Assembly: GCF_030028105.1 (NCBI RefSeq)
Contig: NC_092398.1
Span: 28,614,424 to 28,678,423 of the forward strand
Reading direction: 5' to 3'
From: Mobula birostris
Taxonomy: Eukaryota
Length of the DNA stretch: 64,000 bases
Part shown: in pieces, positions 1,113 to 64,000 of the stretch
Numbering within the stretch: position 1 is the stretch's first letter
Layout of the letters: each line of letters begins with the position of its first letter
Made by a program: the position numbers and the translations under genes
Notes under the pieces: generated by a model
Database searches by the model: none
Seen by the model: only the letters and a program-made list of their open reading frames with translations
What the model was told of the DNA's origin: nothing

Positions 1113-4100
1113 CCCCATCTTCTGCAACTGTCTATCCCTCACCCCTCCCATCCTCTACAACTGTCTATCCCTCACCCCCATCCTCTACAACTGTCTATCC
1201 CTCACCCCCATCCTCTACAACTGTCTATCCCTCACCCCCATCCTCTACAACTGTCTATCCCTCATCCCTCCCATCCTCTACAACTGTCTATCCCTCACCC
1301 CTCCCATCCTCTACAACTGTCTATCCCTCACCCCTCCCATCCTCTACAACTGTCTATCCCTCACCCCTCCCATCCTCTACAACTGTCTATCCCTCACCCC
1401 TCCCATCCTCTACAACTGTCTATCCCTCACCCCTCCCATCCTCTACAACTGTCTATCCCTCACCCCTCCCATCCTCTACAACTGTCCATCCCTCACCCCC
1501 ATCCTCTACAACTGTCTATCCCTCACCCCTCCCATCCTCTACAACTGACTATCCCTCACCCCTCCCATCCTCTGCAACTTCCTATCCCTCACCCCTCCCA
1601 TCCTCTACAACTGACTATCCCTCACCCCTCCCATCCTCTACAACTGTCTATCCCTCACCCCCATCCTCTACAACTGTCTATCCCTCACCCCTCCCATCCT
1701 CTACAACTGTCTATCCCTCACCCCTCCCATCCTCTACAACTCTCTATCCCTCACCCCTCCCATCCTCTACAACTGTCTATCCCTCACCCCTCCCATCCTC
1801 TACAACTGTCTATCCCTCACCCCTCCCATCCTCTACAACTGTCCATCCCTCACCCCCATCCTCTACAACTGTCTATCCCTCACCCCTCCCATCCTCTACA
1901 ACTGTCTATCCCTCACCCCTCCCATCCTCTACAACTGACTATCCCTCACCCCTCCCATCCTCTACAACTGTCTATCCCTCACCCCTCCCATCCTCTACAA
2001 CTGTCTATCCCTCATCCCTCCCATCCTCTACAACTGTCTATCCCTCACCCCTCCCATCCTCTACAACTGTCCATCCCTCACCCCTCCCATCCTCTACAAC
2101 TGTCTATCCCTCACCCCTCCCATCCTCTACAACAGTCTATCCCTCACCCCTCCCATCCTCTGCAACTGTCTATCCCTCACCCCTCCCATCCTCTACAACT
2201 GTCTATCCCTCACCCCTCCCATCCTCTACAACTGTCCATCCCTCACCCCCATCCTCTACAACTGTCTATCCCTCACCCCTCCCATCCTCTACAACTGACT
2301 ATCCCTCACCCCTCCCATCCTCTGCAACTTCCTATCCCTCACCCCTCCCATCCTCTACAACTGACTATCCCTCACCCCTCCCATCCTCTACAACTGTCTA
2401 TCCCTCACCCCCATCCTCTACAACTGTCTATCCCTCACCCCTCCCATCCTCTACAACTGTCTATCCCTCACCCCTCCCATCCTCTACAACTCTCTATCCC
2501 TCACCCCTCCCATCCTCTACAACTGTCTATCCCTCACCCCTCCCATCCTCTACAACTGTCTATCCCTCACCCCTCCCATCCTCTACAACTGTCCATCCCT
2601 CACCCCCATCCTCTACAACTGTCTATCCCTCACCCCTCCCATCCTCTACAACTGTCTATCCCTCACCCCTCCCATCCTCTACAACTGACTATCCCTCACC
2701 CCTCCCATCCTCTACAACTGTCTATCCCTCACCCCTCCCATCCTCTACAACTGTCTATCCCTCATCCCTCCCATCCTCTACAACTGTCTATCCCTCACCC
2801 CTCCCATCCTCTACAACTGTCCATCCCTCACCCCTCCCATCCTCTACAACTGTCTATCCCTCACCCCTCCCATCCTCTACAACAGTCTATCCCTCACCCC
2901 TCCCATCCTCTGCAACTGTCTATCCCTCACCCCTCCCATCCTCTACAACTGTCTATCCCTCACCCCTCCCATCCTCTACAACTGTCCATCCCTCACCCCT
3001 CCCATCCTCTACAACTGTCTATCCCTCACCCCTCCCATCCTCTACAACTGTCTATCCCTCACCCCTCCCATCCTCTACAACTGTCCATCCCTCACCCCTC
3101 CCATCCTCTACAACTGTCTATCCCTCACCCCTCCCATCCTCTACAACTGTCTATCCCTTACCCCTCCCATCCTCTACAACTGTCTATCCTTCACCCCATC
3201 CTCTACAACTGTCTATCCTTCACCCCTCCCATCCTCTACAACTGTCCATCCCTCACCCCTCCCATCCTCTACAACTGTCTATCCCTCACCCCTCCCATCC
3301 TCTGCAACTTCCTATCCCTCACCCCTCCCATCCTCTACAACTGTCTATCCCTCACCCCTCCCATCCTCTACAACTGTCTATCCCTCACCCCTCCCATCCT
3401 CTACAACTGTCTATCCCTCACCCCTCCCATCCTCTACAACTGTCTATCCCTCACCCCTCCCATCCTCTACAACTGTCTATCCCTCACCCCTCCCATCCTC
3501 TACAACTGTCTATCCCTCACCCCTCCCATCCTCTACAACTGTCCATCCCTCACCCCTCCCATCCTCTACAACTGTCTATCCCTCACCCCTCCCATCCTCT
3601 ACAACTGTCTATCCCTCACCCCTCCCATCCTCTACAACTGTCTATCCCTCACCCCTCCCATCCTCTACAACTGTCTATCCCTCACCCCACCCATCCTCTA
3701 CAACTGTCTATCCCTCACCCCTCCCATCCTCTACAACTGTCTATCCCTCACCCCTCCCATCCTCTACAACTGTCTATCCCTCACCCCTCCCATCCTCTAC
3801 AACTGTCTATCCCTCACCCCTCCCATCCTCTACAACTGTCCATCCCTCACCCCTCCCATCCTCTACAACTGTCTATCCCTCACCCCTCCCATCCTCTACA
3901 ACTGTCTATCCCTCACCCCTCCCATCCTCTACAACTGTCTATCCCTCACCCTTCCCATCCTCTACAACTGTCTATCCCTCACCCCTCCCATCCTCTACAA
4001 CTGTCTATCCCTCACCCCTCCCATCCTCTGCAACTTCCTATCCCTCACCCCTCCCATCCTCTACAACTGTCCATCCCTCACCCCTCCCATCCTCTACAAC

Positions 4101-6705
4101 TGTCTATCCCTCACCCCTCCCATCCTCTACAACTGTCCATCCTTCACCCCTCCCATCCTCTACAACTGTCCATCCCTCATCCCTCCCATCCTCTACAACT
4201 GTCTATCCCTCACCCCTCCCATCCTCTACAACTGTCTATCCCTCACCCCTCCCATCCTCTACAACTGTCTATCCCTCACCCTTCCCATCCTCTACAACTG
4301 TCTATCCTTCACCCCTCCCATCCTCTACAACTGTCCATCCCTCACCCCTCCCATCCTCTACAACTGTCTATCCCTCACCCCTCCCATCCTCTGCAACTTC
4401 CTATCCCTCACCCCTCCCATCCTCTACAACTGTCTATCCCTCACCCCTCCCATCCTCTACAACTGTCTATCCCTCACCCCTCCCATCCTCTACAACTATC
4501 TGTCCCTCACCCCTCCCATCCTCTACAACTGTCTATCCCTCACCCCTCCCATCCTCTACAACTGTCTATCCCTCACCCCTCCCATCCTCTACAACTGTCT
4601 ATCCCTCACCCCTCCCATCCTCTACAACTGTCTATCCCTCACCCCTCCCATCCTCTACAACTGTCTATCCCTCACCCCCTCCCATCCTCTGCAACTGTCT
4701 ATCCCTCACCCCTCCCATCCTCTACAACTGTCCATTCCTCACCCCTCCCATCCTCTACAACTGTCCATCCCTCACCCCTCCCATCCTCTGCAACTGTCCA
4801 TCCCTCACCCCCATCCTCTACAACTGTCCATTCCTCACCCCTCCCATCCTCTACAACTGTCCATCCCTCACCCCTCCCATCCTCTACAACTTCCTATCCC
4901 TCACCCCTCCCATCCTCTACAACTGTCTATCCCTCACCCCTCCCATCCTCTGCAACTGTCCATCCCTCACCCCCATCCTCTACAACTGTCTATCCCTCAC
5001 CCCTCCCATCCTCTACAACTGTCTATCCCTCACCCCTCCCATCCTCTACAACTGTCTATCCCTCACCCCTCCCATCCTCTACAAGTGTCTATCCCTCACC
5101 CCTCCCATCCTCCACAACTGTCTATCCCTCACCCCTCCCATCCTCTACAACTGTCTATCCCTCACCCCTCCCATCCTCTACAACTGTCTATCCCTCACCT
5201 CTCCCATCCTCTACAACTGTCTATCCCTCACCCCTCCCATCCTCTACAACTGTCTATCCCTCACCCCTCCCATCCTCTACAACTGTCTATCCCTCACCCC
5301 TCCCATCCTCTACAACTGTCCATCCCTCACCCCTCCCATCCTCTGCAACTGTCTATCCCTCACCCCTCCCATCCTCTGCAACTGTCTATCCCTCACCCCT
5401 CCCATCCTCTGCAACTGTCTATCCCTCACCCCTCCCATCCTCTACAACTGTCTATCCCTCACCCCTCCCATCCTCTACAACTGTCTATCCCTCACCCCTC
5501 CCATCCTCTACAACTGTCTATCCCTCATCCCTCCCATCCTCTACAACTGTCTATCCCTCACCCCTCCCATCCTCTACAACTGTCCATCCCTCACCCCTCC
5601 CATCCTCTACAACTGTCTATCCCTCACCCCTCCCATCCTCTACAACTGTCTATCCCTCACCCCTCCCATCCTCTACAACTGTCTATCCCTCACCCCTCCC
5701 ATCCTCTACAACTGTCTATCCTTCACCCCTCCCATCCTCTACAACTGTCCATCCCTCACCCCTCCCATCCTCTACAACTGTCTATCCCTCACCCCTCCCA
5801 TCCTCTACAACTGTCTATCCCTCACCCCCATCCTCTACAACTGTCTATCCCTCACCCCTCCCATCCTCCACAACTGTCTATCCCTCACCCCTCCCATCCT
5901 CTACAACTGTCTATCCCTCACCCCTCCCATCCTCTACAACTGTCCATCCCTCACCCCTCCCATCCTCTGCAACTGTCCATCCCTCACCCCCATCCTCTAC
6001 AACTGTCTATCCCTCACCCCTCCCATCCTCTACAACTGTCTATCCCTCACCCCTCCCATCCTCTGCAACTTCCTATCCCTCACCCCTCCCATCCTCTACA
6101 ACTGTCTATCCCTCACCCCTCCCATCCTCTACAACTGTCTATCCCTCACCCCTCCCATCCTCTGCAACTGTCCATCCCTCACCCCCATCCTCTACAACTG
6201 TCTATCCCTCACCCCTCCCATCCTCTACAACTGTCTATCCCTCACCCCTCCCATCCTCTACAACTGTCCATCCCTCACCCCTCCCATCCTCTGCAACTGT
6301 CCATCCCTCACCCCCATCCTCTACAACTGTCTATCCCTCACCCCTCCCATCCTCTACAACTGTCTATCCCTCACCCCTCCCATCCTCTGCAACTTCCTAT
6401 CCCTCACCCCTCCCATCCTCTACAACTGTCTATCCCTCACCCCTCCCATCCTCTACAACTGTCTATCCCTCACCCCTCCCATCCTCTGCAACTTCCTATC
6501 CCTCACCCCTCCCATCCTCTACAACTGTCTATCCCTCACCCCTCCCATCCTCTACAACTGTCTATCCCTCACCCCTCCCATCCTCTACAACTGTCTATCC
6601 CTCACCTCTCCCATCCTCTACAACTGTCTATCCCTCACCCCTCCCATCCTCTACAACTGTCCATCCCTCATCCCTCCCATCCTCTACAACTGTCTATCCC
6701 TCATC
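1113..6705. repeat. 33-bp C-rich minisatellite array (~5.6 kb) with 30-bp variant units and higher-order structure
   Basis: Unit ccctcacccctcccatcctctacaactgtctat. Variants include loss of ctc, tgc/tac, tgtcca, tgact and ttcct. Diagnostic variants recur at an exact 750-bp offset (1541/2291, 1741/2491, 2131/2881). Confidence 0.98.
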
Positions 6706-14368: not shown

Positions 14369-14650
14369 AAATCGGTGAGCTCTATCTGTACTTAGAGAAA
14401 CCAGCTGTCTTCGGGAAGGTAAACACTTTGACCTGTTTCGTCAGCGGCATTTTCCCACCGGCCATAAATGTAACGTTACAGAAGAACGCGCAGCCTGTCA
14501 ATGGCGAAGTTAACTCCTCACACCTCTCATTTGGCAAAGATTGGCGATTTCAAGTGCTCCACTACACATACATCCAGCCAGCGGAAGGTGACATATACTC
14601 CTGTAGAGTGCTCCATAAAATCAGCAAAGAGGAAAAAGTAATTTACTGGG
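14369..14650 (+). CDS. WA: MHC W-category alpha chain, exon 3 (alpha2 Ig C1-set domain with beta2m-like motifs)
   Basis: Acceptor ttgtccttttag, donor G|GTAAGA, 282 nt, phase 1-1. NTLTCFVSGIFPP and GDIYSCRVLH are C1-set motifs; LSFGKDWRF aligns to beta2m LSFSKDWSF. Confidence 0.93.
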
Positions 14651-28763: not shown

Positions 28764-30094
28764 GGAAAGGAAAGGGAAAGAATAAGGAGGGGAGAAGAAG
28801 AAGCTGCCAGGCCATAGGTGAAGTCGGAGAAAGGTGGTTGGGTGGAGGAGGCTGGATGAAGTGAGAAGCAGGGAGGTGATAGGTGGAAAAGGAAACAGCT
28901 AAAGAAGGAGGAATCTGATAGGAGAGAATAGTTGACCATGGAGGGAAGGCAAGGAGAAGGAGCACCAGAGGGAGGTGATGGGCAGGTGAAGATAAGCAAA
29001 GAGGTAAGAGGGGAGGCAGATTGTGGAATATATGAGGAAAAGGTTGGGGAAGCAATTTCCTGAAGGTAGAAAATCTAAATTTATGGTATCAGGTTGGAGG
29101 TAACCCATAGAGAATATGAGGTGTTGCTTCTCCAGCCTGAGTCTGACCTCATCATGGGAGTAGAGGAAGTCGTGGACAGACATGTGGGAGTGGGAATCAT
29201 GATCATCATCATGTGCCATGTTGTTGGATGCGGATGATCATGGTCATAGGCTCTTGGCAAATTCTACAGAAGTAGTTTGCTATTGCTTTCTTCTGGGGAG
29301 TTGTTTTACAAAACGAGTGATTCCAGCCATTATCAATACTCTCCAGAGATTGTCTGCCAGGCTGTTGTCAATTGTCAATGGCCACAAAATCAGGATTTAT
29401 GCCCCATGAATCTGACAGGGGGCTAAGCAGGTGCTACACCTTGCCCAGGGGTGACCTGCATGCCAGCAGAGGGAAGGAGCACCTTACACCTTTGGTCAAC
29501 ATATGTGAATAGGAAATCAAACTGAAATGGGTTAAACACAAAGTAAAAAGCGGCATTGTGAGGCAGGTGATTTCCAATGCATGCCAGACAAACGAGAACG
29601 GAGACGGCAGTCACCAGGTATCCAAGTACCAGCAAGTAGTGAATTTGACAGTTCGATTTCAAACTTCTGTCGTGCATTCAGAGGCAGGCCTCGGCATCTG
29701 GCCAAGTTCTTCACACAGACGGTCGTTCTCACCGTGTGAGCAGAGTTCTGAGAAGAAAAGAGAAGAGGGATGATGAAGATATGGACTGTGTAATAATTAA
29801 GACAACACCAGTCAACAGCAGTATGTAACATTTCAGGATATAATGCTAGTGCTTTATAATGGATTAGGCAATCTGCATTTGGAGCATCGCGAGCAGTTTT
29901 GGACCTAAGCTAAGAATGGATGTACTGACAGTGGAGTGGTTCCTGAGGAGGTTCACGAGAATGATCCTGGAAATGAAAGGGGTAAAGTATGATGAGCATT
30001 TGACAGCTCTGGGTCTATACTCACTGAAGTTTAGAACAATGGCGAGTGGGATGTCATCAAAACCTACTAAATATTGAAAGGCCTGGTTAGAATT

Positions 30095-40292: not shown

Positions 40293-43200
40293 GTAAATTC
40301 CTCGCTCTAGATGCTGCCTGACTTAGAACATAGAATGTAAGACCACAATCTCTATCATCCCGTATTACCAGGTAGGAGGTACCGTAGCATTAGGGCAAGG
40401 ACTGTTAGGATGGGAAAAAGTTTCTTCCCCCTGACTGTAGACAATTGAACACCCTGCCATCACCCAGGTATCATCACTTATGAAGCACCAGTAGTGTTAT
40501 ACCATTTACTTTGCACCTAATGCAATATGTCAATCTTGTGGAATATATTTTATTAATTGTTAATTTATTTGTGGTAATATTACTTTGTGAGTTAAATGTA
40601 CTGTGTTGTGCACCTTGGTCTGGAGGAGCATGGTCTTTGTTTAGATATATGGTTGAGTGATAATAAACTGAAACTTCAACGTCAACAGTACAAGCCCTTC
40701 ACTCCAAGATGTTGTGCCGACCTTTTAAACTACTCCAAAATTATTCCAGCCCTTCCCTCTTACATAGACCTCCATTTTTATATCACCCATGTTCCAATCT
40801 AAGAGTTTCTTAAATGATCCTAATGTATGTGCCTCTACCACCACTGCTGGCAGCGCGTTTCATGCAGTCATCACTCTCTGTGTAAAAGCACAAACCTCTG
40901 ATACTCTCGACTATACTTTCTTTCAATCACCTTAAAATTATGCCCCCATTCCCACCCTGGGACTTGCCGAGTTCCTCCAGCACTTTGCTCAAGATTTCCA
41001 GCATCTACAGAATCTCGTGTACATACAGGTGATATACCCCGATGGTCAGTAAGGAATCAAGTTAACAAAGGATGGCGCACATGTGGAATAAACTGCCAGT
41101 GGAGGTGGTGATTGCAGGTTTGATTTCAACACTTAAGGGAAGTTTGGATAAGTACATTGATGGGGGTGGTGTGGAGCGCTATGGTCTGGTTGTGGGTCAA
41201 TGGGAGTAGGCAGTTTGGCATGAAATTGATGAGCCAAAGGGCCAGTTTCTGTGCTGTGATGCTCTGGGACTCCACAGCTATCATTTTTGATATACATTCG
41301 AGAGACAGCACGGTAACAAGCCAAACAACAGGAATTCTGCAGATGCTGGAAATTCAAGCAACTTTGATGTGTGTTACGGTAACAAGCCCTTCAGGTCTAA
41401 AGAGCCTGCACCACCCAATTACACCCATGTCAGCAATTAACCTTCTTCAGCCAGAGAGTGGTGAATCTGTGGACTTCATTGCCACAGACCGCTGTGGAGG
41501 ACAGGCCATTGGGTATATTTAAAGTGGAGGTTGAAAGGTGCTTGATTAGAAAGGGCTTCAAAGGTGATGGGGAGAAGGCAGGAGAATGGGGAGAGGGCTA
41601 ATAAACCAGTCATGATGGAATGACAGAGCAGATTCGATGGGCTGTTTTCTGCTCTGATGTCTTATAGGCGGGAGGAGAAGATGGCAGCGTGCGCAGCTCT
41701 CCGGTGAAATGATATCGTATCTGTAAGTAGGACGCCGTGCACAATTCTGATTTCATGAAGACAGACGTGAGAAGCAGAGGAACATCTGGAGAAATTTCTG
41801 AAATGTCCGGTTCACTGCCGCTGCTACTGTGCGATCAAGAATCTCCAGAGGGAAGGCCCCAAAATCCTCAGCTTCTCCCGCTGCTGGTGGCCGGGGCTGG
41901 GGTCGAAGCGTTTGGGTAGAGATGGTGCTCGGTGTCGGAAGGCTGATCAGAGCTTGAAGTTTTCGGACGGACTCAGAGTCAGACTGTGGTCGGGCATGGC
42001 AGGGAGAATTTTCTTCCTTCTCCCGTCTGCGTGAGATGTGGGACATTCGAGAGACTTTGAACTTTTTTACCGTGCCCATGGTCTGTTCTTATATGGTATT
42101 GTTGCACTGTTGTGACTATATGTTATAATTATGTGGTTTTTATTAGTTTTTCAGTCTTGGTCTGTCCTGTATTCTGTGATATCACACCGGAGGAATATTG
42201 TATCATTTCTTAATGCATGCATTACTAAATGACAATAAAAGAGGACTGCGTGTCCTCATAATCTAATAATCTAATTTGGAATGTGGGAGGAAACCCACAC
42301 GATCAGGAGCAGACCGTACACTATTCCTCACAGGCAGCAGTGGGTTTGAACCCGGGTTGCTGGTTATGCCACTGCGCTACCCATTCTTAAGGCTGTGTGT
42401 GCGCGAGTGATTAACATACTAAAGCAACTGTGGGCTGCCCACAGGTGACTAAAGTGAAAGGGGCAAGTGATTAATTCAAGGAAGGCCCTTGCAGACTCCA
42501 ACGCTTGTTAATGGCGATATGCATCTTGTGCTGAAGAAGGTATTACCTGGGTGTGTAACAGAGGCACTTGCATTTGAACATATGAAGCCTTGAATCCAGT
42601 TCATCCCACGTTGAGAGCCACAACCATGGTGAGCTGGAGAGAAATAATCAATGCTATTATGGGTTTACTGAGTATGCCCACAAAAAAATTGAATCTCAGC
42701 GTTGGTTATGGTGACATATACGGTATGTACTTTGATGATAAATTCACTTTGAACTTTGATAAGCATTGTGAAGTCACTGAGGTGTCTGCAAGGGAATGCT
42801 GCTGAGGGGCACAAGGCAGTACGGGAAAAGACTGCAATCTAAAGTCCGCTGGAATGGGACACTTTGAAAGCACTGAGACATGGCCCAGCAAGGTAGTGAA
42901 AGAGGGAAGTTCATCACAAATGGTAACTGTTGGTCTTACCATTGACACACAGATTCTCAAAAAATGAATTAAATACAACACTTGTGGTTAAATTAAAGGC
43001 GTTGATGAATCGGCAGATAGGAGCAAGATTAAAAATCTCGTTGATTGCTGCCATACCAACAACCTCTCATTCAAATTCAGCAAAATCAAAAAACTGATTA
43101 CTGACTACAGGAGGAGGAAATCAGAGGTCCATGAGCCTGTCCTCATTGGGGGATCAGTAGTGAAGAGGGTCAGTAACTTTTCAATTCCTTCGCATTGCCT

Positions 43201-51847: not shown

Positions 51848-51949
51848 CTTTCCACCTGATCATTCCTCCGAACACTGCAGTCAGTATGCCAATTATTCCA
51901 GCAATTATTCCAATCACATATCCATAGACTGGATAGGTATTCTTGGGAA
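51848..51949 (-). CDS. WB: MHC W-category beta chain, TM exon (VPKNTYPVYGYVIGIIAGIIGILTAVFGGMIRWK)
   Basis: Acceptor tactgattttcctag, donor G|GTAGGA, 102 nt, phase 1-1. Gly-spaced hydrophobic helix followed by basic RWK; in frame with the C1 exon. Confidence 0.82.
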
Positions 51950-52379
51950 CTAGGAAAATCAGTAAAACTGGGGTCAGAAGATATTACAGCAGAGAGCAGT
52001 TTGGCCGCAGTTGTTCGCACTTCATTGTCTTCACCAGACTTCTCTAGTCTTGGTCCAATACAACAGCAGAGAATGGCCCCTTGTCGAAGAAGGATGTGCT
52101 GGGTTTGAACCCAGGTCACTGGTAGTTAAAGTGTTATGTTACCTGCCAGTTAGACTGCTGGAATGTGCCGGTTGTCTTATGAGAAAGGGTCAGACAGGCT
52201 GAGCTTGTATCCACTGAGGATAGAAGTGTGCTAATTGGCTTATTACGATACACCGAGGTAGAGTAAAAAGTATTTGTGAGCCTGATATCCAAACCATCAT
52301 TCCATATATACAAGGTAGTACAAAAGCAAGTACTTGGGAGAACTCGTGGAGGGTTCCCTTAGTGTTAATTTATCGATTG

Positions 52380-53760
52380 AATCAATGGTAAGGGAGGCAA
52401 ATACAATGTCAGCATTCTTTTCCTATGGACTCGAATATGAAAGCAGGAATCTATTGCCGGGCCTCATTAGGCATCAGTCAAATCCGCACTTGTAGTATTA
52501 CGAGCAGTTTTATCTGGGAATGGATGTGCTTGCATTGGCGAGGGTCCAGAGGAGGTTCACGGGAAATTATCCTGGGAATGAATGGGTTAACATGCAGGGA
52601 ACATTTCACAGGTGAAGGGCAAGTAGCGTCAAGGAAGCAGGGTGTCTGTAGAAGGACTTAGATTGGGAGAATTGGCAAAGAAGTAGCAGATGGAACACAG
52701 TGTCGGGAAGTGTAGTTTGGCAGAAGGAATAAAGGCGTAGACTATTTTTCTGAATGGGAGGAAATTCAGAACTCTGAGGGGCAAAGGGACTTGGGAGTAC
52801 TTATGCAGGACTTCCTAAATGTTAATTTGCAGTTTGAGTTGGTACTGAGGAAGGCAAATGCAATGTGAGCATTTGTTTTGAGAGGACTAGAACATTAAAA
52901 CAAGGACGTGATACTGAGACCTCACTTTAAGTATTATGAGCAGTTTTGGGCCTCTTATCTCAGAAAGGATGTACCGAAATTAGAGAGGGTCCAGAGGAGG
53001 TTCATGAGAATGATCCCAGGAAGGAAAGTACGAACCAAGAGAAAACACAAATCCGAGGTGCAAAGGGAATTGGAGGTCCTCGAACAGGATTCCCGAAAGG
53101 TTAATTTGCAGGTGGAGTCAGGAGTAAGGAAGGCAAGTGCAGTGTTACCAATCTTTTATGCTGAGGCTTCACAAGAGATTGGTCTGATGTAGTTTGAGTA
53201 CTGGAGAGGGTCCGAATGAGATTAACCAGAATGATCCTGACAATGCACAGGTTAACATATGATGAGAATTTGATGGCTCTGGGCCGGTACTTGGTGGAGT
53301 TTAGAAGAATGATGGGGGTGGGGGGGGTGGGGGTGTAAATCTCATTCAATCCTATTAAATACTGAAAAGCCTAGACAGAGTGGACGTGGAGAGGATGTTT
53401 CCTCTCGTGGGGGAGTCGAGCACCAGAGGACACAGCCTCAGAATAGAAGGACATCCCTTTAGAACAGAGATGAGAAGGAACTTCTTTAGGTAAGTCCCTG
53501 AATTCATTGCCACAGACTGCTCTGGAGGCCACTTCACTGGGTAGATTTAAAGATGAAGTTGAAAGGTTCTTGATTATTAAGGGTGTCAAAGGTTACGGGG
53601 AGAAGGCAGAAATACGGGGTTGAGTGGGTAATAAATTAGCCATGAAATGCCAAAGCAGACTCAATAGGCCAAATGGACAAATTCTGCTCCTATAATTTAC
53701 GACCTTATGATGATCAGCATGGACCAGTTGGGCTGAAGGGCCCATATCTGTATTACTCCA
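52380..53760 (+). mobile_element. Cluster of degenerate CR1 3' fragments in a WB intron
   Basis: Repeated CR1 RT C-terminal translations (QFWASYLRKD..ERVQRRF) and the CR1 3' UTR. Confidence 0.75.
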
Positions 53761-54397
53761 TGACTGATGCAGAAAGGGGAGATACTGGTCCTCACCAGGT
53801 TACAGCAGGATTCTGTTCCTGCAAAACAATCGTAACCTGAATGGGTTGAAAATGTGAACCAAATCACCCAATCATGTGGCAGCAACTCAATGCATCAAAG
53901 CATGCAGACATGGCCAAGAGGTCCAGTTGTTGTTCAGACCAAACATCAGTTTGGGGAAGAAATGTGATCTGAGTGACTTTCACCATATGGAATCTAGTCA
54001 AGTTGGCGCCTGTGTACAACGTCCCCCTGGTCGACATCTACCAGATAGTCCATGAAACTGTTTATTTCACTTCTTTTACGTCTGCTTTTCATTTTAAATG
54101 TGTTTCTAGAACTGTTAAGAGCCTGTGATTTACAATTTGGAGATCAATTGAGTGATCTAGTGCTTTGCTGTCTCCAGGAAGATTCCAGGAAGCTCAAACA
54201 GCCTCAAGGCGAAGCAGCTTAAAGATAAGGCAGGGGCCAATGATCGACTCCATTTTGCCAATTAAAGTGTCGAGGAAGATTGAATCTGACGCAACTGCTT
54301 GCCTTTTGATTGCAGGGATGGATTTCTCTGCTGTCAGAGGAGTTTGTGTGGTGCCTTTCACTCACTGCTGTTGGCGGGTAGGCCTCTGTGTTTGAGT

Positions 54398-54399
<2 letters not shown>

Positions 54400-54429
<30 letters not shown>
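54400..54429. repeat. (CT)n microsatellite
   Basis: Direct reading of the sequence. Confidence 0.9.
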
Positions 54430-54435
<6 letters not shown>

Positions 54436-55279
54436 GGTCAGAGGATATTACCAGGTTCTGAATTTATGGATTGGACTATGGACTTTCAGTCTTATGATTT
54501 TTATATTCTATGTTTTCCCCTGTTCTTTCACCTTGTTATTGCAGAGCATGTTTTGTTAGTTTTTTTTTACATGAGGGAGTGGGGTTTTGGTGGGTTGATG
54601 TTCTTGTAGCATTTTGATTTTTTTGTGCAGGGTGGGGGTTTGGGGGGGGTTGATGTTCCTGTTCAGTTTTGTTTTTTTTGTGCAGTGGAGGGGAGGGGGT
54701 TTGATGTTTATCTTTGAATGACTTCCATGGATTTCTTTTTTTCATGGCTATCTGGAGAAGATGAATCTCAGAGTTGAATACTGAATACATAGATTGATAA
54801 TAAATGTACCTTTGAACGATGCTGATGCACGACGGGGTGGTTTGAGTATCTCAGAAATTGTTGAGCTCGTGGGATTTTCAGGTACAAGTCTCGAGAGTTT
54901 AAAGTGAACAGTGTGAAAAACAAACAAAAAAAAATCATCTACTGAGTGGCAGTTGTGGGCAAAAGTGCCTTGTTAGTGAGATTTCAGAGGAGAATGGCCA
55001 GACTGGTTCACGCTAACAGGAACACGACAGTAACTGAAAGAACCGCCTGATACAATGTTGGTGTGCGGAAGAGCGTCACTGAACGCAAACATTTCCAACC
55101 TTGAAGCGGATGAGCTACAGCAGCATAAGACCACGACCTTACACTCAATGGTCACTTTATTATGTAGAGGAGGTGCCTGATAAAGTGGCCACTGAGTGTA
55201 TAATATAGTGTTGGACAGAGTGTGAACCAGATCATCACCAGTACACTGCACCCCAAATTACTCAGACTCTGAGCCTTAC

Positions 55280-55561
55280 CCCAAACTGCATGCAGCTTGT
55301 CAGGGACGCTCAGATGCTCGATTTCACAAGTGTAAGTGTCACCCTTCCCGGGGTCAATTTCGACCTGTAGCCGGACTTGGAACGTCCCATCCCGGTTGGG
55401 TAAAATGCTTGTATTTAGCACTTCCCGATCGATCGCCACACCATTCCGCAGCCACATTGCGTGGATTTTCTTGGGATAAAATCCATGCACTTGGCATGTC
55501 AGGGCCAAGTTATTCTCTCTATTCTTCATGTGTCTTGAGGTTATTGTGATAGTCGGCTTCA
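55280..55561 (-). CDS. WB: MHC W-category beta chain, beta2 Ig C1-set exon
   Basis: Acceptor tttctgtccactgcag, donor G|GTAAGG, 282 nt, phase 1-1. LTCQVHGFYP, MWLRNG, LPNRDGTFQ and YTCEIEH are C1-set motifs. The C1 exon is certain; the WB assignment (versus a nonclassical class I alpha3) is inferred. Confidence 0.85.
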
Positions 55562-56549
55562 CTGCAGTGGACAGAAACACATTGAAGCTGAACTTGGTTA
55601 CGGGATCAAAAAAAGTAGAGTAACAGAATTTCAAAGTTCAAAGTAGGTTTACTATTAAAGCATGTGTATATTATACAATCTTGAGAATACAGCATGATGG
55701 AATGGAGGAACAGACACAATGGGTCGAATGGTCTAATTCTGTTCCTATGTTTATTCACCTCCCTAGATGCTGCCTGGCCTGCTGAATTGTGTGCGCGCGT
55801 GCGCACGCGTGTGTGTGCATGCACGTGCATACGCACATGTTGCTTTGGATTGCCACCATCTGCCGAATCTTCTGTGTTTAGAAACTGTCCCCTGGTCATC
55901 TGCCTCTGACCAGGGGTAGGGTTCTTTCAGTCACTCCCAGGTCACATGAAAGTTTCAAGAACTGTTGGTAACCCAAGGTTTCCATAAGATGGAAATACTT
56001 AGAAATAAAAATTTGCATGGTGAGGTTAATTAGCTACAGGTTAGTGCAGATCAGAATCAGGTTTAATATCACTGACATAGACTCAGTGTCCACTTTATTA
56101 GGTACACCTGCTCATTAATATAAACCTCTAATCAGCCAATCATGTGCCAGCAACTCAATGCATAAAAGCATGCAGACGTTGTCAAGAGGTTCAGTTGTTG
56201 TTCAGACCAAACATCAGAATGGGGAAGAAATGCAATCTAATTGACTTTGACCATGGACCAGATGGGGTGGTCTGAGTATCTCAGAAACTGTTGATCTCCT
56301 GGGATTTTCATACACAACGGTCTCTCGAGTTCACAGAGAACGGTGCGACAAAGAAAAAACATCCAGTGAGCGGCAGTTTTGTGGGTGAAAGCACCTTGTT
56401 AATGAGAGAGGTCAGAGGAGGATGGCCAGACTGGTTCAATCTGACAGGACGGGGACAGTAACTCAAATCACCATGTGTTACAGCAGTGGTGTGCAGAAGA
56501 GCATCTCTGAACGTACAACATGTCACACCTCAAAGTGACTGAGCTGCAG

Positions 56550-58860
56550 CAGTGATTCCCAAGGGGAGTGCGGTATTGTATGATGTCATGGGGGAAGAGT
56601 GACACCCTTACTTGAGGCTCGAGACCTGACCGACCGTTAGTAGACTAGGCACTTCCGACAAAAAGGATGAGGCACTGGAACACAGGAAGAACCACAGCTC
56701 AGCAGGCGGTGAGCACCGTCATCACAACAAGTCTGAAATTTGACAATCTCATCCAACCTTACCAACCAAACAGACATTATTGGGGATGCATAAATTAGCA
56801 AACAGGGTGTCCAACAATTACCCTTGACTGGCAGCACGGAACGAGTTCGTGCAATTTAACGGTTGATAGGTCAAGTACACCCTCTCCACCTTCGTGACAG
56901 ATCTGTGGAAAACAGGTCACGCAACGATACAGTGCTGGCCGGAACCAAATGGAGAAATAGAGTCAATCAGTGAACCCGTCAACACTGAGGAATCCTCTTG
57001 AGGTGTTCAAAGTGACCTCAGCTTCATATGTGCGGTCAAGAACCATCTTTGGGGATTACGAAACTTTACGTGACTGGTCAATCGTGCTGACTGGAATAGT
57101 AAGAAGGTAGCTTCCCAAATACAAGCTCTGTCCCGACTAACATTCGATTCCAATCTGAATCCTTGTCAATGTAATTTTTGCAGTTGTGATCGTCTTCATC
57201 TTTGCCTCGCTGTTCCTTTGCGTGCCACTGCCATCGTTCCATCCGTGTCAACTCACTGCCATCAACATCCGATAGGCATTCCCAGTGGTGTTAATTTATT
57301 ATTTTAATTTAGCCCCGTTAACAATGGGTAAGTATGTACGGTGCGATCTCTACAAGCTTGAAGGCGTTGAAGCCTTGCTTTCTAATCCTGCTAAGAAACA
57401 GAAACTACACAAAGTGTGCCAATACAAAGTTACATACCTGAAATATGTTTTTATTCCATCCCATTAGATCAGCAGCGCCCCATGTTTCCTATTTGTAATA
57501 CTGTACTGTCTAATGAATCCATGAAACCATCAAGATTGCAGGAACGCTTCTGCAAAAGACACCCTGAAAAGGCTACTTATGGTATTACTCGGTTCCAAAA
57601 GATGAAAGGAGCATTGCAAAACCATTGCACACTCAAGTCATTTGCCAAGAAATGACCTTGCTAGTGGTCTCATTGCTTCTTATATAATTTCCAAAATGAT
57701 AGCAAGGTGTGGAAAATCTCATACAATTGGTGAAAGATTAATAATGCCTGCTGTATCAGAAGTGCTCACCCCTGTTCTGAAAATGGAAACCAGTATTTTA
57801 AAATCAATTCCTCTGAGCAATAGCTCATAGTATTGATGAAATGAGTGAAGATAAGGAATATCAACTGTGCACAGAGCCACAAAAAACAGAATTTGGGATA
57901 CAACTGGATGAGTCAACAGTGTAAGGCAACACGGCATTGCTAAAGTCATAAGTACAGTTTATCAAAAAGGGAAAAAGAGATTCTCTTTTGTAAAAAGTTA
58001 AAAACATATCAACAGAGAAACAATCTATGATGAGCTCAAAATGTATATTGAAGATGAAAGTATTTCAATTAGGAACATGATTTCTTGTACAAGAGATGGA
58101 GCACCATAAATGACAGGTTGCCATGCCGGTTTAGTGACATTAATGAAAAAAGAAATTCCAAGTCTGTTTGCAATCCATTGTGTAATTCATCATCGATACC
58201 TTGCAGCCAAAAACCTCAGCTCGTGACCTTTTTCAAGCATGACTTTTGTAATACCTGCTATCAACAAAATTAAAGCTCATCCATTAAATAGCAGAATATT
58301 TCACCATTTATGCCAAGATAACAATGCAGAGGTTGAACGCTTGCTTCTTCACACTGAAGTGTGTTGGCTGTCAAAAGGCTGCTGCTTAAAATGTTTCTTT
58401 GATCTTTTTGACACTGGTGGAAGTCAACAAGATTGAACTTCTATATGAAGATGTGGTAAACAAAGCCGATCAGTATGACAAACTGAACATTCTAAATACG
58501 AAACTGCAGCGTGAAAACTTCAATTTAATCCAGGCAAAAAGTGCAGTGTCCACTTTTATCAGAAAATTGGAAATATGTAAGCAAAACATTGGGAGAAGAA
58601 TGTTCTCAGTTTCCCTGCATGGGAAGTATGGCACTCTCTTTCACAGATGGTGATTTGCAAGAGTGCTCCTTACACCTGCAGTCACCAAAGAAAGATTTTC
58701 AGAATTGATTCAAGGATTTGAACGATCCAGAAATTTTGGACTGGGTAATTAGCCCATTCCTTCGCAAGGTGGAAGGACAGAAAGAGGGCTCGCAAGAACA
58801 AATTACCAAAATTCAGAATAAGGGAGAAGCAAAAATGCTTATTTAAAAATGTCCATTTTG
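56550..58860 (+). mobile_element. Degenerate hAT (Charlie/Buster-like) transposon, 3' end cut by L1
   Basis: TIR-like cagtgattcccaa at 56550. Translations include CNTVLSNESMKPSRL (BED finger), KSHTIGERLIMPA, QLDES and LLLHTEVCWLSKG. Confidence 0.82.
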
Positions 58861-61800
58861 GGACTTCGGGGTTGAGCATGGAGTGACTGGGTGCGTGTGA
58901 GTGTGGCTCCCAACTTTTATTGGAAATCTACCTGTTTATCTTTGCCGTATGCTCGAGATAACTGAATATTTAACATTGTGAACAACCTGGGACGTTGCTG
59001 GACGCTGAAATGGCAAATAAAATGTACCTTCGAAGTAAAACTGGAGAAACAGATAGCGAAGCCTCGAGCAAGAAAGCTGATGTTACAGTAATGGCACCGT
59101 TGCACGTCGCTGGACCTGGACCTGCACTGCCTGATGACTTGGAGAGGCTTCGTTTAGTGCTTCTTACTGACATGATGCAAGTGGTGCATTCTGCCCTAAA
59201 AAGAGAACTTGAAGATGCTTTGTCACCAGTGAATGCTACTATGGAACAAATTATGTCTTATTACGAGTCACACAACCAACGCATTCGTGAGGTTGAAGAC
59301 GGCCTGAATGATTACCAACGCATTCGTGAGGTTGAAGACGGCCTGAATGAGCGCCGAAGCCGCCATTGCAGTGTTGCAGAACAAAAACCCATTTCTGAAG
59401 GGAAAGCTAGATGACCTCAAAAATCGGTCGTGGAGATCCAATTTGAGAGTGGTCGGCATTCCTGAAAATTTGGAAGGTTCAGACTCTGTTAAACTTATGA
59501 CCGAGTTTTTTGACAATGTGCTGGGGACAAATTTCTTCCCAAGGCCTCTTGTGCTTTCGTGTGCTCACCAAGTTGGGCCTAAACCATCCAGTGTCTCTGA
59601 AGCTAAGCAAACAAGACCAAGAACGTCCCTGGTTCTCTTTCACTTCTTTAAGATAAGCAATGCATCAATAGACGGAAACAGGAGCTGTATTTCCGCGGAC
59701 ATCGCGTGTTTTTTTTAATGAAGATTTCAGTGCGGAACTGGGGAAAAGACGAGCAGCTTTTGAGGAGGTGAAATCCCTGCTTTATGGGAAAGGGGTCAGG
59801 TTTGGCCTCTTGTATCCTGCCCAGCTCCGGGTCGTGCATGAAGGTGAAAAGCATTATTTCCATACACCAGAGGCGGACAAAGAGTTTTAACATTTGCGCT
59901 GGGGAGAAGAAGAACGAGAAAAGCAATGACTTTTTTTTTGGGTTATTCATGCAGCATTGAAAGGGGCCTCCTGCCGAGGCAAACTGTTAATTTTCGCAAT
60001 CCACTTCTTTGTTCATTTTTTCCAGTTTAATTTGTGGAACATGATCGGGTCAAATTGCTGTGCTGCCGAAACTGATTAACAAAAACTTTTAACCAGCAAA
60101 ATGTAAATATTTGGGATTTGTATCTCTGGTGTTTAGTTTCCTAGTTTTTTTTAATGGTTTGCTTGACCTGAGTTATCTTTAGCCTATATATATTACAGAT
60201 AGAATAAGTGATGGTATAAATTTTAAGGAGGGGAGCCACCCTAGATTAGATTGAAAGTTTAGTTGTATGGGGAACGCTTTGGAAGTTTTTTGTTGGGTAC
60301 TGCCTGCGACCATCCTCAGTTGGGGAGGTAGATCTAGTTTTCGGGGGTTAATTGGGTTTTTTTGTTGTTTGTGTAAAGGGGTGGGGGTAGTGTTTTAGGG
60401 GATTACCATGGCAGTTTATTATTTTGTGTGTTACGGATTGGCCAGACTTTCTTTTCATTGTGCATTATCATGTGCAGCTTGTGCCCTCGCACTGTTTGGA
60501 TTGTAGGTGCTGTTTGTCTTTTGATATGGTTAACATGAGTGCTGCTGATGGAGGCCACCCTGTGAGGTTTACTTCTTGGAATGTAAAGGGGCTCAGTGGT
60601 CCTGTTAAAAGAGCTAAAGTTTTCTCTCATCTCAAACAATTAAAAGCAGATATACCATTTCTACAAGAGACACATTTAAAAGTATAAGACCATAATAGAC
60701 TTTGTAAAGCGTGGATTAGTCAGGTTTTTCATTCTAGATTTAATAGTAGGTCCAGGGGGGTGGCAATATTAATCACCAAAAGAATGCAGTTTACACCATC
60801 TGATGTAATCAGTGACCTTAATGGTCACTTTATTATAGACTCTGGATCTCTCTTTCAGATACCTGTCATTTTGGTATATGTTTATGCCCCTAATTGGGAC
60901 GACGTCCACTTTGCAAATAAGGTTTTGTCATTAATACCTAACCTGAATACACACCGGCTAATCTTTTCAGGAGATTTGAATTGTGCTATTGACCCACTGC
61001 TTGATAGGTCTAGCTCTAGGGGAACATTTTCCGGTATGGCAAAGGCCTTCTCGATGTTTATGCAACAAAATGGTTATATGGATCCTTGGAGATTTTTGAA
61101 TCCATCATTCTCTTTCTTTTCTCATGTTCAACACTCCTATTCCAGGCTAGACTATTTCTTTATAGATAGCTCCTTGATACCAATGATTAGACAAATTGAG
61201 TATACTGCTGTAGTTATATCTGATCACTTGCCCGTGAAACTGGACCTATGTTTTCCTTTAAACATTAGAGAACGGCCTCTGTGGAGACCCCTTTTGCTTT
61301 CCAATGAGAAATTTTGTAGTTATATCAGCTAACAAAAACACATTTTTCGAGACCAACAAAACTGAGTTGATATCGTACTCTTTACTTTGGGAAACTTTAA
61401 AAGCTTTCTTGAGGGGTCAAATAATATCTTATACTTCACATGCCAATAAAGAGCATAGGAAGGAAATGCAAGTGTTATCGCAATCTATTTTGGACCTGGA
61501 TAGGCAATATTCCGAGGCACCCACTGCAGAATTATATAAAAGCTGGGCTGATTTGCAAGCGAAGTTTAATCTTCTCTTTACAAACCAATCAGAACAATTA
61601 ATTCTTAAGGCATGTGGCCTCTAATATGGTGACAAGGTGAGCCGGCTTATGGCTCATCAGTTGAAGCGTCAAGCTGCATCACAACTTATTCCCCAGATAA
61701 GAGACACGCACCAAAACTTGACAAGCAATCCAAAAGAGATTAATAACATCTTTGCAACTTTTTATTCCTCTCTGTATGCCTCACAGTTCCCCTCAGGTAT

Positions 61801-63900
61801 AACAAATATGGAACATTTTTTAGATAATTTGGAAATACCAACTCTGGAACCAGAGGAGGTGGAGAATTTAAATCGGGCTCTTGGGTAGGAAGAGATTAAT
61901 AATGCCATTACGGCTATGCAGAGTGGTAAGTCCCCAGATCCTGATGGTGATCTGATATAATTTTATAAGAAATTTAAGGTAAGCTGATACCGGTCCTTCT
62001 AGAAGTGTTTCAGGAATCTTTGAAGAATGGTTCCTTACCCCCTACTCTTTCAGAGGCATCTATTTCACTTCTTCTTAAAAAGGACAAGGACCCGACTCAA
62101 TGTGGATCATATCGCCCCATCTCACTTTTGAATGTGGATGTGAAAATTTTGGCTAAAGTGCTTGCGTGCCGTTTAGAACGCTCCCTTCCCTAGATAATCT
62201 CAGATGATCAAACAGGTTTTATTAAAAATTGCCATTCTTTTTTTAATATCCATCGACTGGCTGATGTGGTTTATTCACCGAGTGATTCTCTGAGTCAGGA
62301 GGTTGTTATCTCCTTGGGTGCGGAGAAGATGTTTGATAGAGTGGAGTGGGTATACTTGTTTAGAGTTTTGGAGAAATTTGGATTTGGCAGAATATTTGTA
62401 GCCTGGGTTAAGCTATGATATCACTTGCCTTTAGCGTGTATACAGATAAATTATTTTCGATCGGACTATTTCCCATTAACACGCGGCACTCGCCAAGGCT
62501 GCCCATTGTCCCCTCCTCTTTTTGCAATTGCAATTGAGCCTCTTTCTATTGCACTTTAAGTCAACTACATTATTTCAAGGTGTTAGGAGAGGGAACGTGG
62601 AACACCGTGTATCCCTATATGCTGATGACCTCTTACTTTACGTTAGCGACCCTGTAGGTAGCAGTCCTGCTATTGCGTCATTATTAGGTCAACTTGGAGC
62701 CTTCTATGGCTATAAACTGAACCTTCAAAAAAGCAAATGATTTCCCATTAATAACTTGGCCCTACAGATCCGACAGGAATCTTTGCCTTTTCCTTTATCT
62801 CAAGATGGTTTTGTATACCTATGAATACATGTTACTCGCTCTTTTACATCTCTGTCTGAAGCTAACTACAGGCCTCAGGTTGGCCAAATGAAGGCTGATT
62901 TTGAGAGATGGTGCAGTTTACCCCTTACTATAGCTGGGAGAATTCAATCAGTGAAAATGACTATACTTCCCAGATTTCTTTATTTGTTCCAGTGCTTGCC
63001 AATTTTCTTATCTAAGTTATTTTTCAAATCAGTCGACCAAGCTATAACCTCTTATATTTGGGAAAATGAGGTCCCAAAGGTTAATGAGTGCACTCTCCAA
63101 AGAGGTCATGACGTAGGTGGAACGGGCCTTCCTAGCTTTGTTCATTATTACTGGGCATCAAACATTCAAAAGGTATTATTTTGGCTCCACCGGCTAGATA
63201 TAAACTGGTGCCCGCTTGGGACACGGTCTTGCCACTCCTCGTCTCTCCCAGCTTTAGTGTATTCTTCCTTACCTTTGAAATCCTCTCAATTCACATCTAA
63301 CTCGGTCGTGCTCTCCACCCTCAAAATTTTTAATCAATTTCGCTCCACTGTAAGTTCACATCAGCTTCAGTTTTGGGTCCCATTCATAGAAACCATCTAT
63401 TTCTTCCCTCCACACTCAATTCATTTTTTAGACAATGGGGTTTGAACTGTCTTATACGCATTAAGGATTTGTACACTGATAACATATTTAATAGTTTTGA
63501 TAACCTGTGCAGTAATTATGGCCTTCTGCATAATCATTTTTTAAAATACCTGCAGATTCACCACTTTGTCAAGGAAAAATTTCCCTGTTTTTCTGATCTA
63601 CCCCCTGCTATATTGTGGGAGAAACTCACTCATAGCTTTAATAATAAAGGGCTGATCTCTGTACTATACTCTCAGCTGATGTCCTTGGGAGTTCAAGATC
63701 TAAACAAAACTAAAACTAGGTGGGAGGTTGATCTTGGTATGGATCTGGTTGAGGAATATTGGGCAAAAGCATTGAATAGGGTTCATTCCTCATCATCATG
63801 TGCTAGACTGGGGCTCATACAATTTAAAGTTTTACACAGGGTACATTTATGTAAAACCAGCCTTGCTGACATATATCCTGGGACAGATGCTGGCTGTGAC
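58861..63900 (+). mobile_element. Near full-length degenerate L1 (ORF1 ~58995-59830; ORF2 from ~60527), antisense in a WB intron
   Basis: 5' end ggacttcggg. ORF1: RSWRSNLRVVGIPE. ORF2: APE (FTSWNVKGL, LQETH, YSRLDYF) and RT (YRPISLLNVD, VSLYADDLLL), with many stops and frameshifts. Confidence 0.92.
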
Positions 63901-64000
63901 ACATGGACTGTTCATAAATCTGATGGCAGAAGGGAAGAAGCTTTTCCTGAATCCTTGAGCGTATGCCTTCAGGCTCCTGTACCTCCTCCCTGAAGGTAGC

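What the first reader, a model, noticed from the sequence alone, without database searches (positions are those of the whole stretch)
51848..55561. Beta chain with class I alpha3 motif (P..DG) and a testable prediction for its missing beta1 exon
ILPNRDGTFQ aligns to HLA class I RPAGDGTFQ (P235, G239), not class II beta IQNGDWTFQ. A 102-nt Gly-rich TM exon follows and ends K|G in phase 1, as class II beta TM exons do. No beta1 or leader exon was found in the 8.4 kb to the window end, which is mostly hAT and L1. Inference: a single beta1 exon lies beyond 64000 and should carry the class I alpha2 residues that contact beta2m W60 (HLA Q96, A117, G120, D122 equivalents).
Basis: partly seen in the sequence, partly recalled or inferred. 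Interest (0 to 1): 0.72.

Follow-up and report, generated by a model that had tools for sequence, protein, structure and literature searches.

The report
Manta ray W-category MHC beta-chain gene
These two exons belong to an intact giant manta ray gene for the beta chain (WB) of the "W-category" MHC family described in 2021; it is built like class II with class I-like contact residues, so it is a new species member of a known family, not a new kind of gene.

Summary
An Ig C1-set exon (55280-55561, minus) and a 102-nt connecting-peptide/TM exon (51848-51949) are real, and the motif ILPNRDGTFQ is there.

A single 258-nt membrane-distal (beta1) exon lies 981-1238 nt beyond the window end. A leader exon lies at +2386 to +2536. 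No second distal exon exists, so this is not a class I gene.

The gene has six coding exons over 36.9 kb in Mobula birostris. NCBI annotates it as "class II beta chain-like" (XP_072102492-94). [quoted passage not shown] 2021, so it is a W-category WB gene.

Three of the four predicted class I alpha2-type residues are present (Q, A, G). The D122 equivalent is Ala in this copy.

It is one of at least seven WB_DS1-like copies on this chromosome. Spliced leader-beta1-beta2 RNA contigs exist for paralogues. Expression of this copy is not shown.

This scan had already noted and followed up the W-category cluster in the same genome: the WA gene in this window and the cluster just beyond its end.

Verdict: known family, new member, modest interest.

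The parts
55562..64000 (-). In-window part of the 9.4-kb beta1-beta2 intron. The two 5' coding exons of the gene lie BEYOND the window end and cannot be listed as parts. The beta1 exon is at L009:981-1238 (= window end +981 to +1238 = C34:28679404-28679661; 258 nt, phase 1/1). The leader exon is at L009:2386-2536 (+2386 to +2536 = C34:28680809-28680959).
   Evidence: No WB-like exon lies in 55562-64000 by tblastn. beta1: splice sites ccag| and |gtaag; PF00969 30.9 bits against a cut-off of 20.9; present in NCBI isoforms X1 and X3. Leader: ATG at L009:2536, donor G|gtgag at 2386; 100% match to P0001 residues 1-50. RNA-like contigs join 2386 to 1238 and end near 2609-2660.
55280..55561 (-). beta2 exon (Ig C1-set domain), 282 nt, phase 1/1.
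   Evidence: Identical to P0001 residues 52-144.
55377..55406 (-). Motif ILPNRDGTFQ: P57 and G61 in W-category numbering (HLA P235 and G239 equivalents).
   Evidence: Aligned to MR1 ILPSGDGTYQ. P57 and G61 are named as WB/class I hallmarks in PMC8713811.
51848..51949 (-). Connecting peptide/transmembrane exon, 102 nt, phase 1/1, with GxxxG (GIIAG) and a C-terminal GG.
   Evidence: Closely matches the houndshark and great white shark WB_DS1 TM rows of Dataset S3.
42547..42633 (-). Cytoplasmic exon 1 (AHHGCGSQRGMNWIQGFICSNASASVTHP), alternatively skipped.
   Evidence: Present in P0152 and P0001, absent in P0151.
29659..29747 (-). Last coding exon (ELCSHGENDRLCEELGQMPRPASECTTEV) plus the TGA stop.
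60424..63993 (+). Decayed LINE (L1-like) insertion inside the beta1-beta2 intron.
   Evidence: Fragments of Exo_endo_phos_2 and RVT_1 in several frames, all below the Pfam cut-offs.
14369..14650 (+). alpha2 exon of the neighbouring WA (DS10-like) gene, a candidate partner chain. It carries Y8, L37, L55, F57 and W61.
   Evidence: Read directly. Compared with the little skate WA_DS10-like row of Dataset S2. An earlier follow-up of this scan also covers it.

Best explanation
The two exons are the beta2 (Ig) and connecting-peptide/TM exons of a WB_DS1-like gene, the beta chain of the W-category MHC family, in the giant manta ray Mobula birostris. The gene runs on the minus strand over 36.9 kb: leader, one beta1 exon, beta2, CP/TM, an optional cytoplasmic exon and a last exon. 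All introns are phase 1. The full reading frame is an intact 322 aa.

By homology with the family, the chain should pair with a WA alpha chain; a DS10-like WA gene lies convergently in the same window. The pair would form a class II-shaped heterodimer. Its interdomain contacts would be class I-like. WB beta2 P57 would hydrogen-bond WA alpha2 Y8. G61 would replace the class II tryptophan at the platform/Ig interface. WA alpha2 W61 would insert under the platform against beta1 Q6, A32 and G35.

In this copy the acidic residue 37 that normally hydrogen-bonds that tryptophan is Ala. The ligand is unknown, and the molecule is non-classical.

Shown here: the exon structure, family membership and the residues. 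Inferred: the pairing, surface expression and function.
For: Exon map by tblastn with NCBI models of this gene and full-length relatives, with splice sites read directly.

NCBI isoforms XP_072102492-94 of Mobula birostris match the exons exactly.

Full-length leader-beta1-beta2-TM-CY proteins exist in M. hypostoma (P0153) and Hemitrygon akajei (P0006).

The beta1 exon passes the PF00969 cut-off and beta2 is C1-set.

No PF00129 (class I alpha1/alpha2) match lies on this chromosome.

The best non-ray hits among 1.84 billion representative proteins are P0045/P0155 (53% identity). P0155 equals the 'great white shark WB DS1L' rows of Datasets S1-S3 in Okamura 2021.

P57/G61, Q6/A32/G35 and the TM glycines are present.

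RNA-like contigs are spliced exactly at leader 2386|1238 beta1 and continue past 982 into downstream exons, with no intron coverage.
Against: None of the laid contigs is identical to this copy's beta1; the best is 95%.

RNA-like runs of the source species hold only 0-4% of this copy's beta1 words, so transcription of this copy is not shown.

No NCBI model joins leader, beta1 and beta2. X2 skips beta1, and X1 and X3 start at an internal Met.

Position 37 is Ala. dN/dS among the expanded paralogues is about 1-1.8 in beta1, and one paralogue has a beta1 frameshift. This is compatible with relaxed constraint.

Pairing with WA was not supported or refuted by the complex prediction (see Tried and rejected).
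Confidence: 0.9

Rival explanations
1. An intact-looking but silent or decaying duplicate: a WB gene by descent that no longer makes a functional beta chain.
For: This copy's beta1 words are nearly absent from RNA-like runs of the source species, while paralogue transcripts are present. NCBI gives only beta1-skipped or N-terminally truncated models. The acidic residue 37 is lost. dN/dS is about 1 or higher among the expanded copies. A sister copy has a frameshift, and four copies have G61R. Introns are large and full of transposons.
Against: All six coding exons are open, with canonical splice sites and compatible phases. Contigs drop rare variants, so absence from them is weak evidence. dN/dS near or above 1 is also what MHC ligand-binding domains show under diversifying selection.
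Confidence: 0.25
2. A conventional MHC class II beta-chain gene, as the NCBI product names suggest.
For: Class II beta exon architecture. PF00969 hit on beta1. The weak best PDB matches of beta1 are chicken class II beta chains.
Against: beta2 has G, not the invariant class II W, at position 61, and has the class I/W P57. beta1 has only one Cys, so it lacks the class II beta1 disulfide. It has A32/G35 where the chicken class II beta chain aligned has I and R. Its nearest relatives are published WB_DS1 sequences. It lies on C34, while the class I alpha1/alpha2 hits lie on C6 and C4593.
Confidence: 0.03
3. A class I or class I-like (MR1/CD1-type) heavy-chain gene whose alpha1 and alpha2 exons lie upstream. 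This was my own first reading.
For: The top PDB hits of the Ig exon are MR1 and class I alpha3. Eleven of 30 mid-sized database hits carry PF00129.
Against: Only one distal exon lies between the leader and the Ig exon. No PF00129 match lies on this chromosome. HLA-DR beta scores about as high as single class I chains (68.0 against 69.4 bits).
Confidence: 0.02

Closest known systems
[quoted passage not shown] PNAS 2021, PMC8713811
   Same: The leader-beta1-beta2-CP/TM-CY exon plan. P57 and G61 in beta2. Q6, A32 and G35 and the FNYT glycosylation site in beta1. The GYVxGIxxGxxGIxxAxxGG TM pattern. An AHxCGSQ-type cytoplasmic exon. A linked DS10-like WA gene.
   Different: Only 53% identity in beta2 to the shark sequences. 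Ala instead of E/D at position 37. A 50-residue leader. At least seven copies in two clusters on one chromosome, against one or two loci in houndshark. The WA gene in this window is convergent rather than head-to-head. The gene is stretched to 37 kb by transposon-filled introns.
MHC class I heavy chain alpha3 domain (MR1, classical class I)
   Same: The ILPxxDGTxQ motif with P235/G239 equivalents. The Ig exon's best per-domain PDB match is MR1 alpha3 (59 bits).
   Different: One membrane-distal exon instead of two. No PF00129 domain. The expected partner is a membrane-anchored WA chain, not soluble beta2-microglobulin.
Conventional MHC class II beta chain (e.g. HLA-DRB, chicken BLB2)
   Same: Domain and exon architecture. 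The beta1 exon passes the PF00969 cut-off. A single GxxxG TM motif.
   Different: Lacks the invariant W61 of beta2 and the beta1 disulfide. Carries class I-type interface residues.

Membership tests
W-category MHC, WB (beta) chain | Class II beta-type architecture: signal peptide, one membrane-distal domain exon, one Ig C1-set exon, then CP/TM/CY | tested here: met
   Exon map. Splice sites. Pfam PF00969 plus PF07654. Spliced contigs leader|beta1|downstream.
W-category MHC, WB (beta) chain | beta2 domain has P57 and lacks W61 (mostly G61) | tested here: met
   ILPNRDGTFQ. Criterion from PMC8713811.
W-category MHC, WB (beta) chain | beta1 carries Q6, A32, G35 and D37 (equivalents of HLA Q96, A117, G120, D122) | tested here: inconclusive
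   Q, A and G are present; position 37 is Ala (alignment A1). Shark and skate DS1 have E or D there, so three of four are met in this copy.
W-category MHC, WB (beta) chain | Closest sequence relatives are published WB sequences | tested here: met
   The best non-ray hits P0045/P0155 and P0089/P0158 are shark WB_DS1-like. P0155 matches the Dataset S1-S3 rows.
W-category MHC, WB (beta) chain | Genomic linkage to a WA gene whose alpha2 has Y8, F/L37, L55, F/Y57 and W61 | tested here: met
   The WA alpha2 exon at 14369-14650(+) reads EIGELYLY...INVTLQ...LSFGKDWRF. It is about 15 kb from the last WB exon. The orientation is convergent, not head-to-head.
W-category MHC, WB (beta) chain | Forms a heterodimer with WA that reaches the cell surface | not testable with these tools
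   The complex prediction gave no verdict. It needs co-transfection as in PMC8713811, Fig. 6.
MHC class I heavy chain | Two membrane-distal exons (alpha1 and alpha2; PF00129) | tested here: not met
   Only one distal exon. PF00129 hits lie only on C6 and C4593.
Conventional MHC class II beta chain | Invariant W61 in beta2 and a conserved beta1 disulfide | tested here: not met
   G at position 61. A single Cys in beta1.

The most novel reading that the evidence does not exclude
The manta-specific expanded WB_DS1-like sublineage has at least five copies including this one. It has a 6-residue longer beta1, A/V/T instead of D/E at position 37, G61R in four copies, and dN/dS of about 1-1.8 in beta1. 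On the novel reading it is not decaying but diversifying: a W-category branch that has remodelled the class I-like tryptophan pocket and platform/Ig interface, changing its partner or ligand use. This would be the first sign of adaptive radiation within the W-category.
Probability: 0.15. Interest if true: 0.5.

Novelty: new member of a known kind. Interest (0 to 1): 0.25.

Why it matters
W-category molecules are the proposed intermediate between class II and class I MHC. They have been described in sharks, a skate, some bony fish and salamanders. I found no paper describing them in Mobula, and NCBI labels the manta genes as ordinary class II beta chains.

This report gives a correct identity and a complete exon map for one copy. 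It shows that the family is expanded to at least seven WB_DS1-like copies in the manta. It also shows that one sublineage has lost the acidic residue that anchors the hallmark tryptophan. That is useful for annotation and for choosing copies for pairing or structural work, but it does not change the picture of the family.

Tried and rejected
1. My first reading was a class I or MR1-like heavy chain, from the PDB ranking. I rejected it after the exon map, the PF00129 genome scan and the earlier scan note that pointed to the W-category paper. The top PDB rows were inflated by beta2m-heavy chain fusion constructs. Single class I chains (69.4 bits) and HLA-DR beta (68.0 bits) score alike, so overall similarity of the Ig domain does not separate the classes, as the paper also says.

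2. Complex prediction on the WA alpha2 and WB beta2 Ig exons gave score 0.12 against a mark of 0.34, i.e. no verdict. It is not used as evidence either way.

3. Pfam on small ORFs at 57.4-58.7 kb gave no hAT domain.

4. The look-up of sequencing runs was busy three times before it answered.

5. Read laying could not span beta1 to beta2 (9.4 kb against the 6000-letter limit), so I laid the leader-beta1 stretch instead. No contig identical to this copy was found.

6. I did not build a domain tree, because the paper reports no resolution for the alpha3/beta2 group.

7. I did not run structure prediction, because the class I alpha2-alpha3 and class II beta1-beta2 folds would match equally.

Those exons are now described inside the intron part.
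Full report
**What is at the coordinates**

On the minus strand, a 282-nt exon (55280-55561) is bounded by cag| and |gtaagg. It encodes KPTITITSRHMKNRENNLALTCQVHGFYPKKIHAMWLRNGVAIDREVLNTSILPNRDGTFQVRLQVEIDPGKGDTYTCEIEHLSVPDKLHAVW. This is an Ig C1-set domain (PF07654, E=6e-17).

A 102-nt exon lies 3.3 kb downstream (51848-51949). It encodes PKNTYPVYGYVIGIIAGIIGILTAVFGGMIRWK and ends AAA G|gt. Both exons are phase 1 at both ends.

**First reading and why it changed**

A PDB sequence search put MR1 and class I alpha3 on top, with ILPNRDGTFQ aligned to MR1 ILPSGDGTYQ. I first took the gene for a class I-like heavy chain.

Three results overturned that:
- A genome-wide scan with PF00129 (class I alpha1/alpha2) found hits only on contigs C6 and C4593, none on this chromosome, C34.
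- The highest PDB totals came from beta2m-heavy chain fusion constructs. Single class I chains (69.4 bits) and HLA-DR beta (68.0 bits) score alike.
That led me to Okamura et al. 2021 (PMC8713811).

**The missing exons**

I fetched 30 kb beyond the window end (L009-L011). The window is G000:C34:28614424-28678423.
- **beta1 exon.** A 258-nt exon with ccag| and |gtaag, phase 1/1, lies at L009:981-1238 on the minus strand. It encodes MHISQITFSGKGSEFSMATLQFAYNGEAAVCFNYTTGKFVAISPLVKSFVDDLNRNQKIIRNVARYVNDMPFAMGIVHQAVQTLT. It passes the curated cut-off of PF00969, MHC_II_beta (30.9 against 20.9 bits).
- **Leader exon.** It lies 1147 nt further upstream at L009:2386-2536, running from the ATG to G|gtgag.
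- **Everything else.** tblastn with full-length relatives maps the remaining coding exons: an optional cytoplasmic exon at 42547-42633 and the last exon at 29659-29747 with the stop. It finds no other MHC-like exon of this gene, and none between 55562 and 64000.

The gene thus has six coding exons over 36.9 kb. The joined frame is open for 322 aa.

The 9.4-kb beta1-beta2 intron holds a decayed LINE (endonuclease and RVT_1 fragments). Pfam did not confirm the hAT call.

**Identity**

A search of 1.84 billion representative proteins returned P0001 at 100% identity. Cluster look-up names it XP_072102493.1 of Mobula birostris, on a 40,552,194-bp contig, which is the length of C34. Two sister isoforms are XP_072102492.1 and XP_072102494.1. 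All are called class II beta chain-like.

X1 and X3 contain beta1 (from an internal Met), then the junction codon Met, then beta2. This confirms the beta1|beta2 splice I inferred. X2 joins the leader directly to beta2. No NCBI model joins all three.

Full-length leader-beta1-beta2-TM-CY proteins exist in M. hypostoma (P0153, 320 aa) and Hemitrygon akajei (P0006).

The best non-ray hits are P0045/P0155 (basking shark and great white shark, 53% identity) and P0089/P0158 (zebra shark). P0155 is, residue for residue, the "great white shark WB DS1L" row of Datasets S1-S3 of the paper. The gene is therefore a WB_DS1-like W-category beta chain.

The paper's species list has skate but no Mobula. No paper on Mobula MHC turned up.

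**The residue prediction**

In the paper's numbering, the class I-type features of WB are P57 and G61 in beta2 and Q6, A32, G35 and D37 in beta1. The beta1 four contact the tryptophan W61 of beta2m/WA alpha2.

| Position (paper numbering) | HLA equivalent | This copy |
|---|---|---|
| beta2 P57 | P235 | present |
| beta2 G61 | G239 | present |
| beta1 Q6 | Q96 | present (HISQ) |
| beta1 A32 | A117 | present (FAYNG) |
| beta1 G35 | G120 | present (FAYNG) |
| beta1 D37 | D122 | Ala (NGEAA) |

The beta1 assignments come from an alignment of WB beta1 with the manta's own class I alpha2 exons (A1).

Position 37 across relatives:
- E or D in houndshark, great white shark, bullhead shark, dogfish and little skate DS1.
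- D in Hemitrygon.
- E in two compact manta copies.
- A, V or T in the intact expanded manta copies whose beta1 was read.

So three of the four predicted residues hold in this copy.

The neighbouring WA alpha2 exon (14369-14650, plus strand) does carry Y8, L37, L55, F57 and W61.

**Family context in this genome**

The beta2 exon has six further copies at 91-96% identity on C34, in two clusters (25.1-25.6 Mb and 28.7-29.05 Mb). Matching beta1 and TM exons accompany them.

There are two sublineages:
- **Compact copies**, about 5.3 kb from leader to TM, at 28.75 and 25.39 Mb. They are Hemitrygon-like, with E37.
- **Expanded copies**, including this one.

Within the expanded group, four copies have R instead of G61 and one has a 1-nt deletion in beta1. 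Pairwise dN/dS is about 1.0-1.8 in beta1 and mostly 0.2-1.4 (up to 2.7) in beta2. The counts behind these ratios are small.

**Transcripts**

Runs that look like RNA were found with the beta2 exon. They consist of small contig sets and show no intron coverage.

Laid on L009:900-2750, their contigs align to beta1 exactly from 982 to 1239. They then continue, after 51 letters that correspond to the masked CTC-rich end of the leader (2387-2437), at 2438. This means splicing at 1238|2386 as predicted. They also extend beyond 982 by 234-390 letters into downstream exons.

These contigs are 88-95% identical to this copy's beta1, so they come from paralogues or from a sister species. RNA-like runs of the source species hold only 0-4% of this copy's beta1 words, while its DNA runs hold up to 88%.

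The exon plan is thus confirmed for the family. Expression of this copy is not shown, and contigs cannot show absence.

**How it most likely works**

By homology with the tiger salamander experiment in the paper (WA and WB mature and reach the surface only together), the chain should pair with a WA chain. The result would be a class II-shaped heterodimer with class I-like interfaces.

The paper pairs WB_DS1-like with WA_DS10-like, and the WA in this window is DS10-like. A prediction of the two Ig domains together gave no verdict, so pairing remains inferred.

The Ala at position 37 would remove one of the two conserved hydrogen bonds to the tryptophan. Whether that weakens pairing or reflects drift is open.

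**Verdict**

This is a correctly spotted gene of a family published in 2021. It is a new member of a known kind and of modest interest. The manta-specific expansion and interface changes are the only part that might repay further work.

Noticed in passing
window 1114-6703: A 5.6-kb minisatellite: a 33-nt unit (CCCATCCTCTACAACTGTCTATCCCTCACCCCT) in about 171 copies at 95% matches, C-rich on the plus strand. It lies directly upstream of the plus-strand WA gene and explains the extreme GC skew of the first 6 kb.
   Followed up: partly
L009:1239-2385 and L009:2797-2987: WB intron 1 is a G-rich (sense strand) degenerate repeat. A 35-nt repeat in 5.6 copies lies just upstream of the WB 5'UTR and is C-rich on the gene's sense strand, reminiscent of the minisatellite upstream of WA.
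   Followed up: no
C34: 25.14, 25.39, 25.61, 28.75, 28.85, 29.05 Mb (L002-L007, L037-L043): Six further WB_DS1-like copies in two clusters on the same chromosome. Four have R instead of G at position 61 of beta2. The 25.15 Mb beta1 has a 1-nt deletion. Copies at 28.75 and 25.39 Mb are compact (about 5.3 kb) and keep E at position 37.
   Followed up: partly
L010:1360-1633 and L011:2964-3092 (minus strand): A diverged WB-like beta2 (42-50% identity, split by a frameshift near L010:1458-1470) and a weak beta1-like match, 9-20 kb upstream of this gene. This is consistent with the WB pseudogene noted earlier by the scan.
   Followed up: partly
L009:900-967: A short element just inside intron 2 that is extremely abundant in RNA-like contigs (summed depth above 100,000, with hundreds of contigs carrying unrelated flanks). 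It is probably a SINE or other dispersed repeat.
   Followed up: no
whole gene (NCBI models XP_072102492-94): None of the three annotated isoforms contains leader, beta1 and beta2 together, although the frame is open. X2 skips beta1, and X1 and X3 start at Met17 of beta1. The product names (DLA/rano class II beta-like) hide the W-category identity.
   Followed up: partly
genome-wide: The PF00129 class I alpha1/alpha2 hits cluster on C6 (174.9-180.2 Mb) and on unplaced C4593, while the W-category genes are on C34. PF00969 at E<=0.01 found only WB beta1 exons on C34, not conventional class II beta.
   Followed up: no
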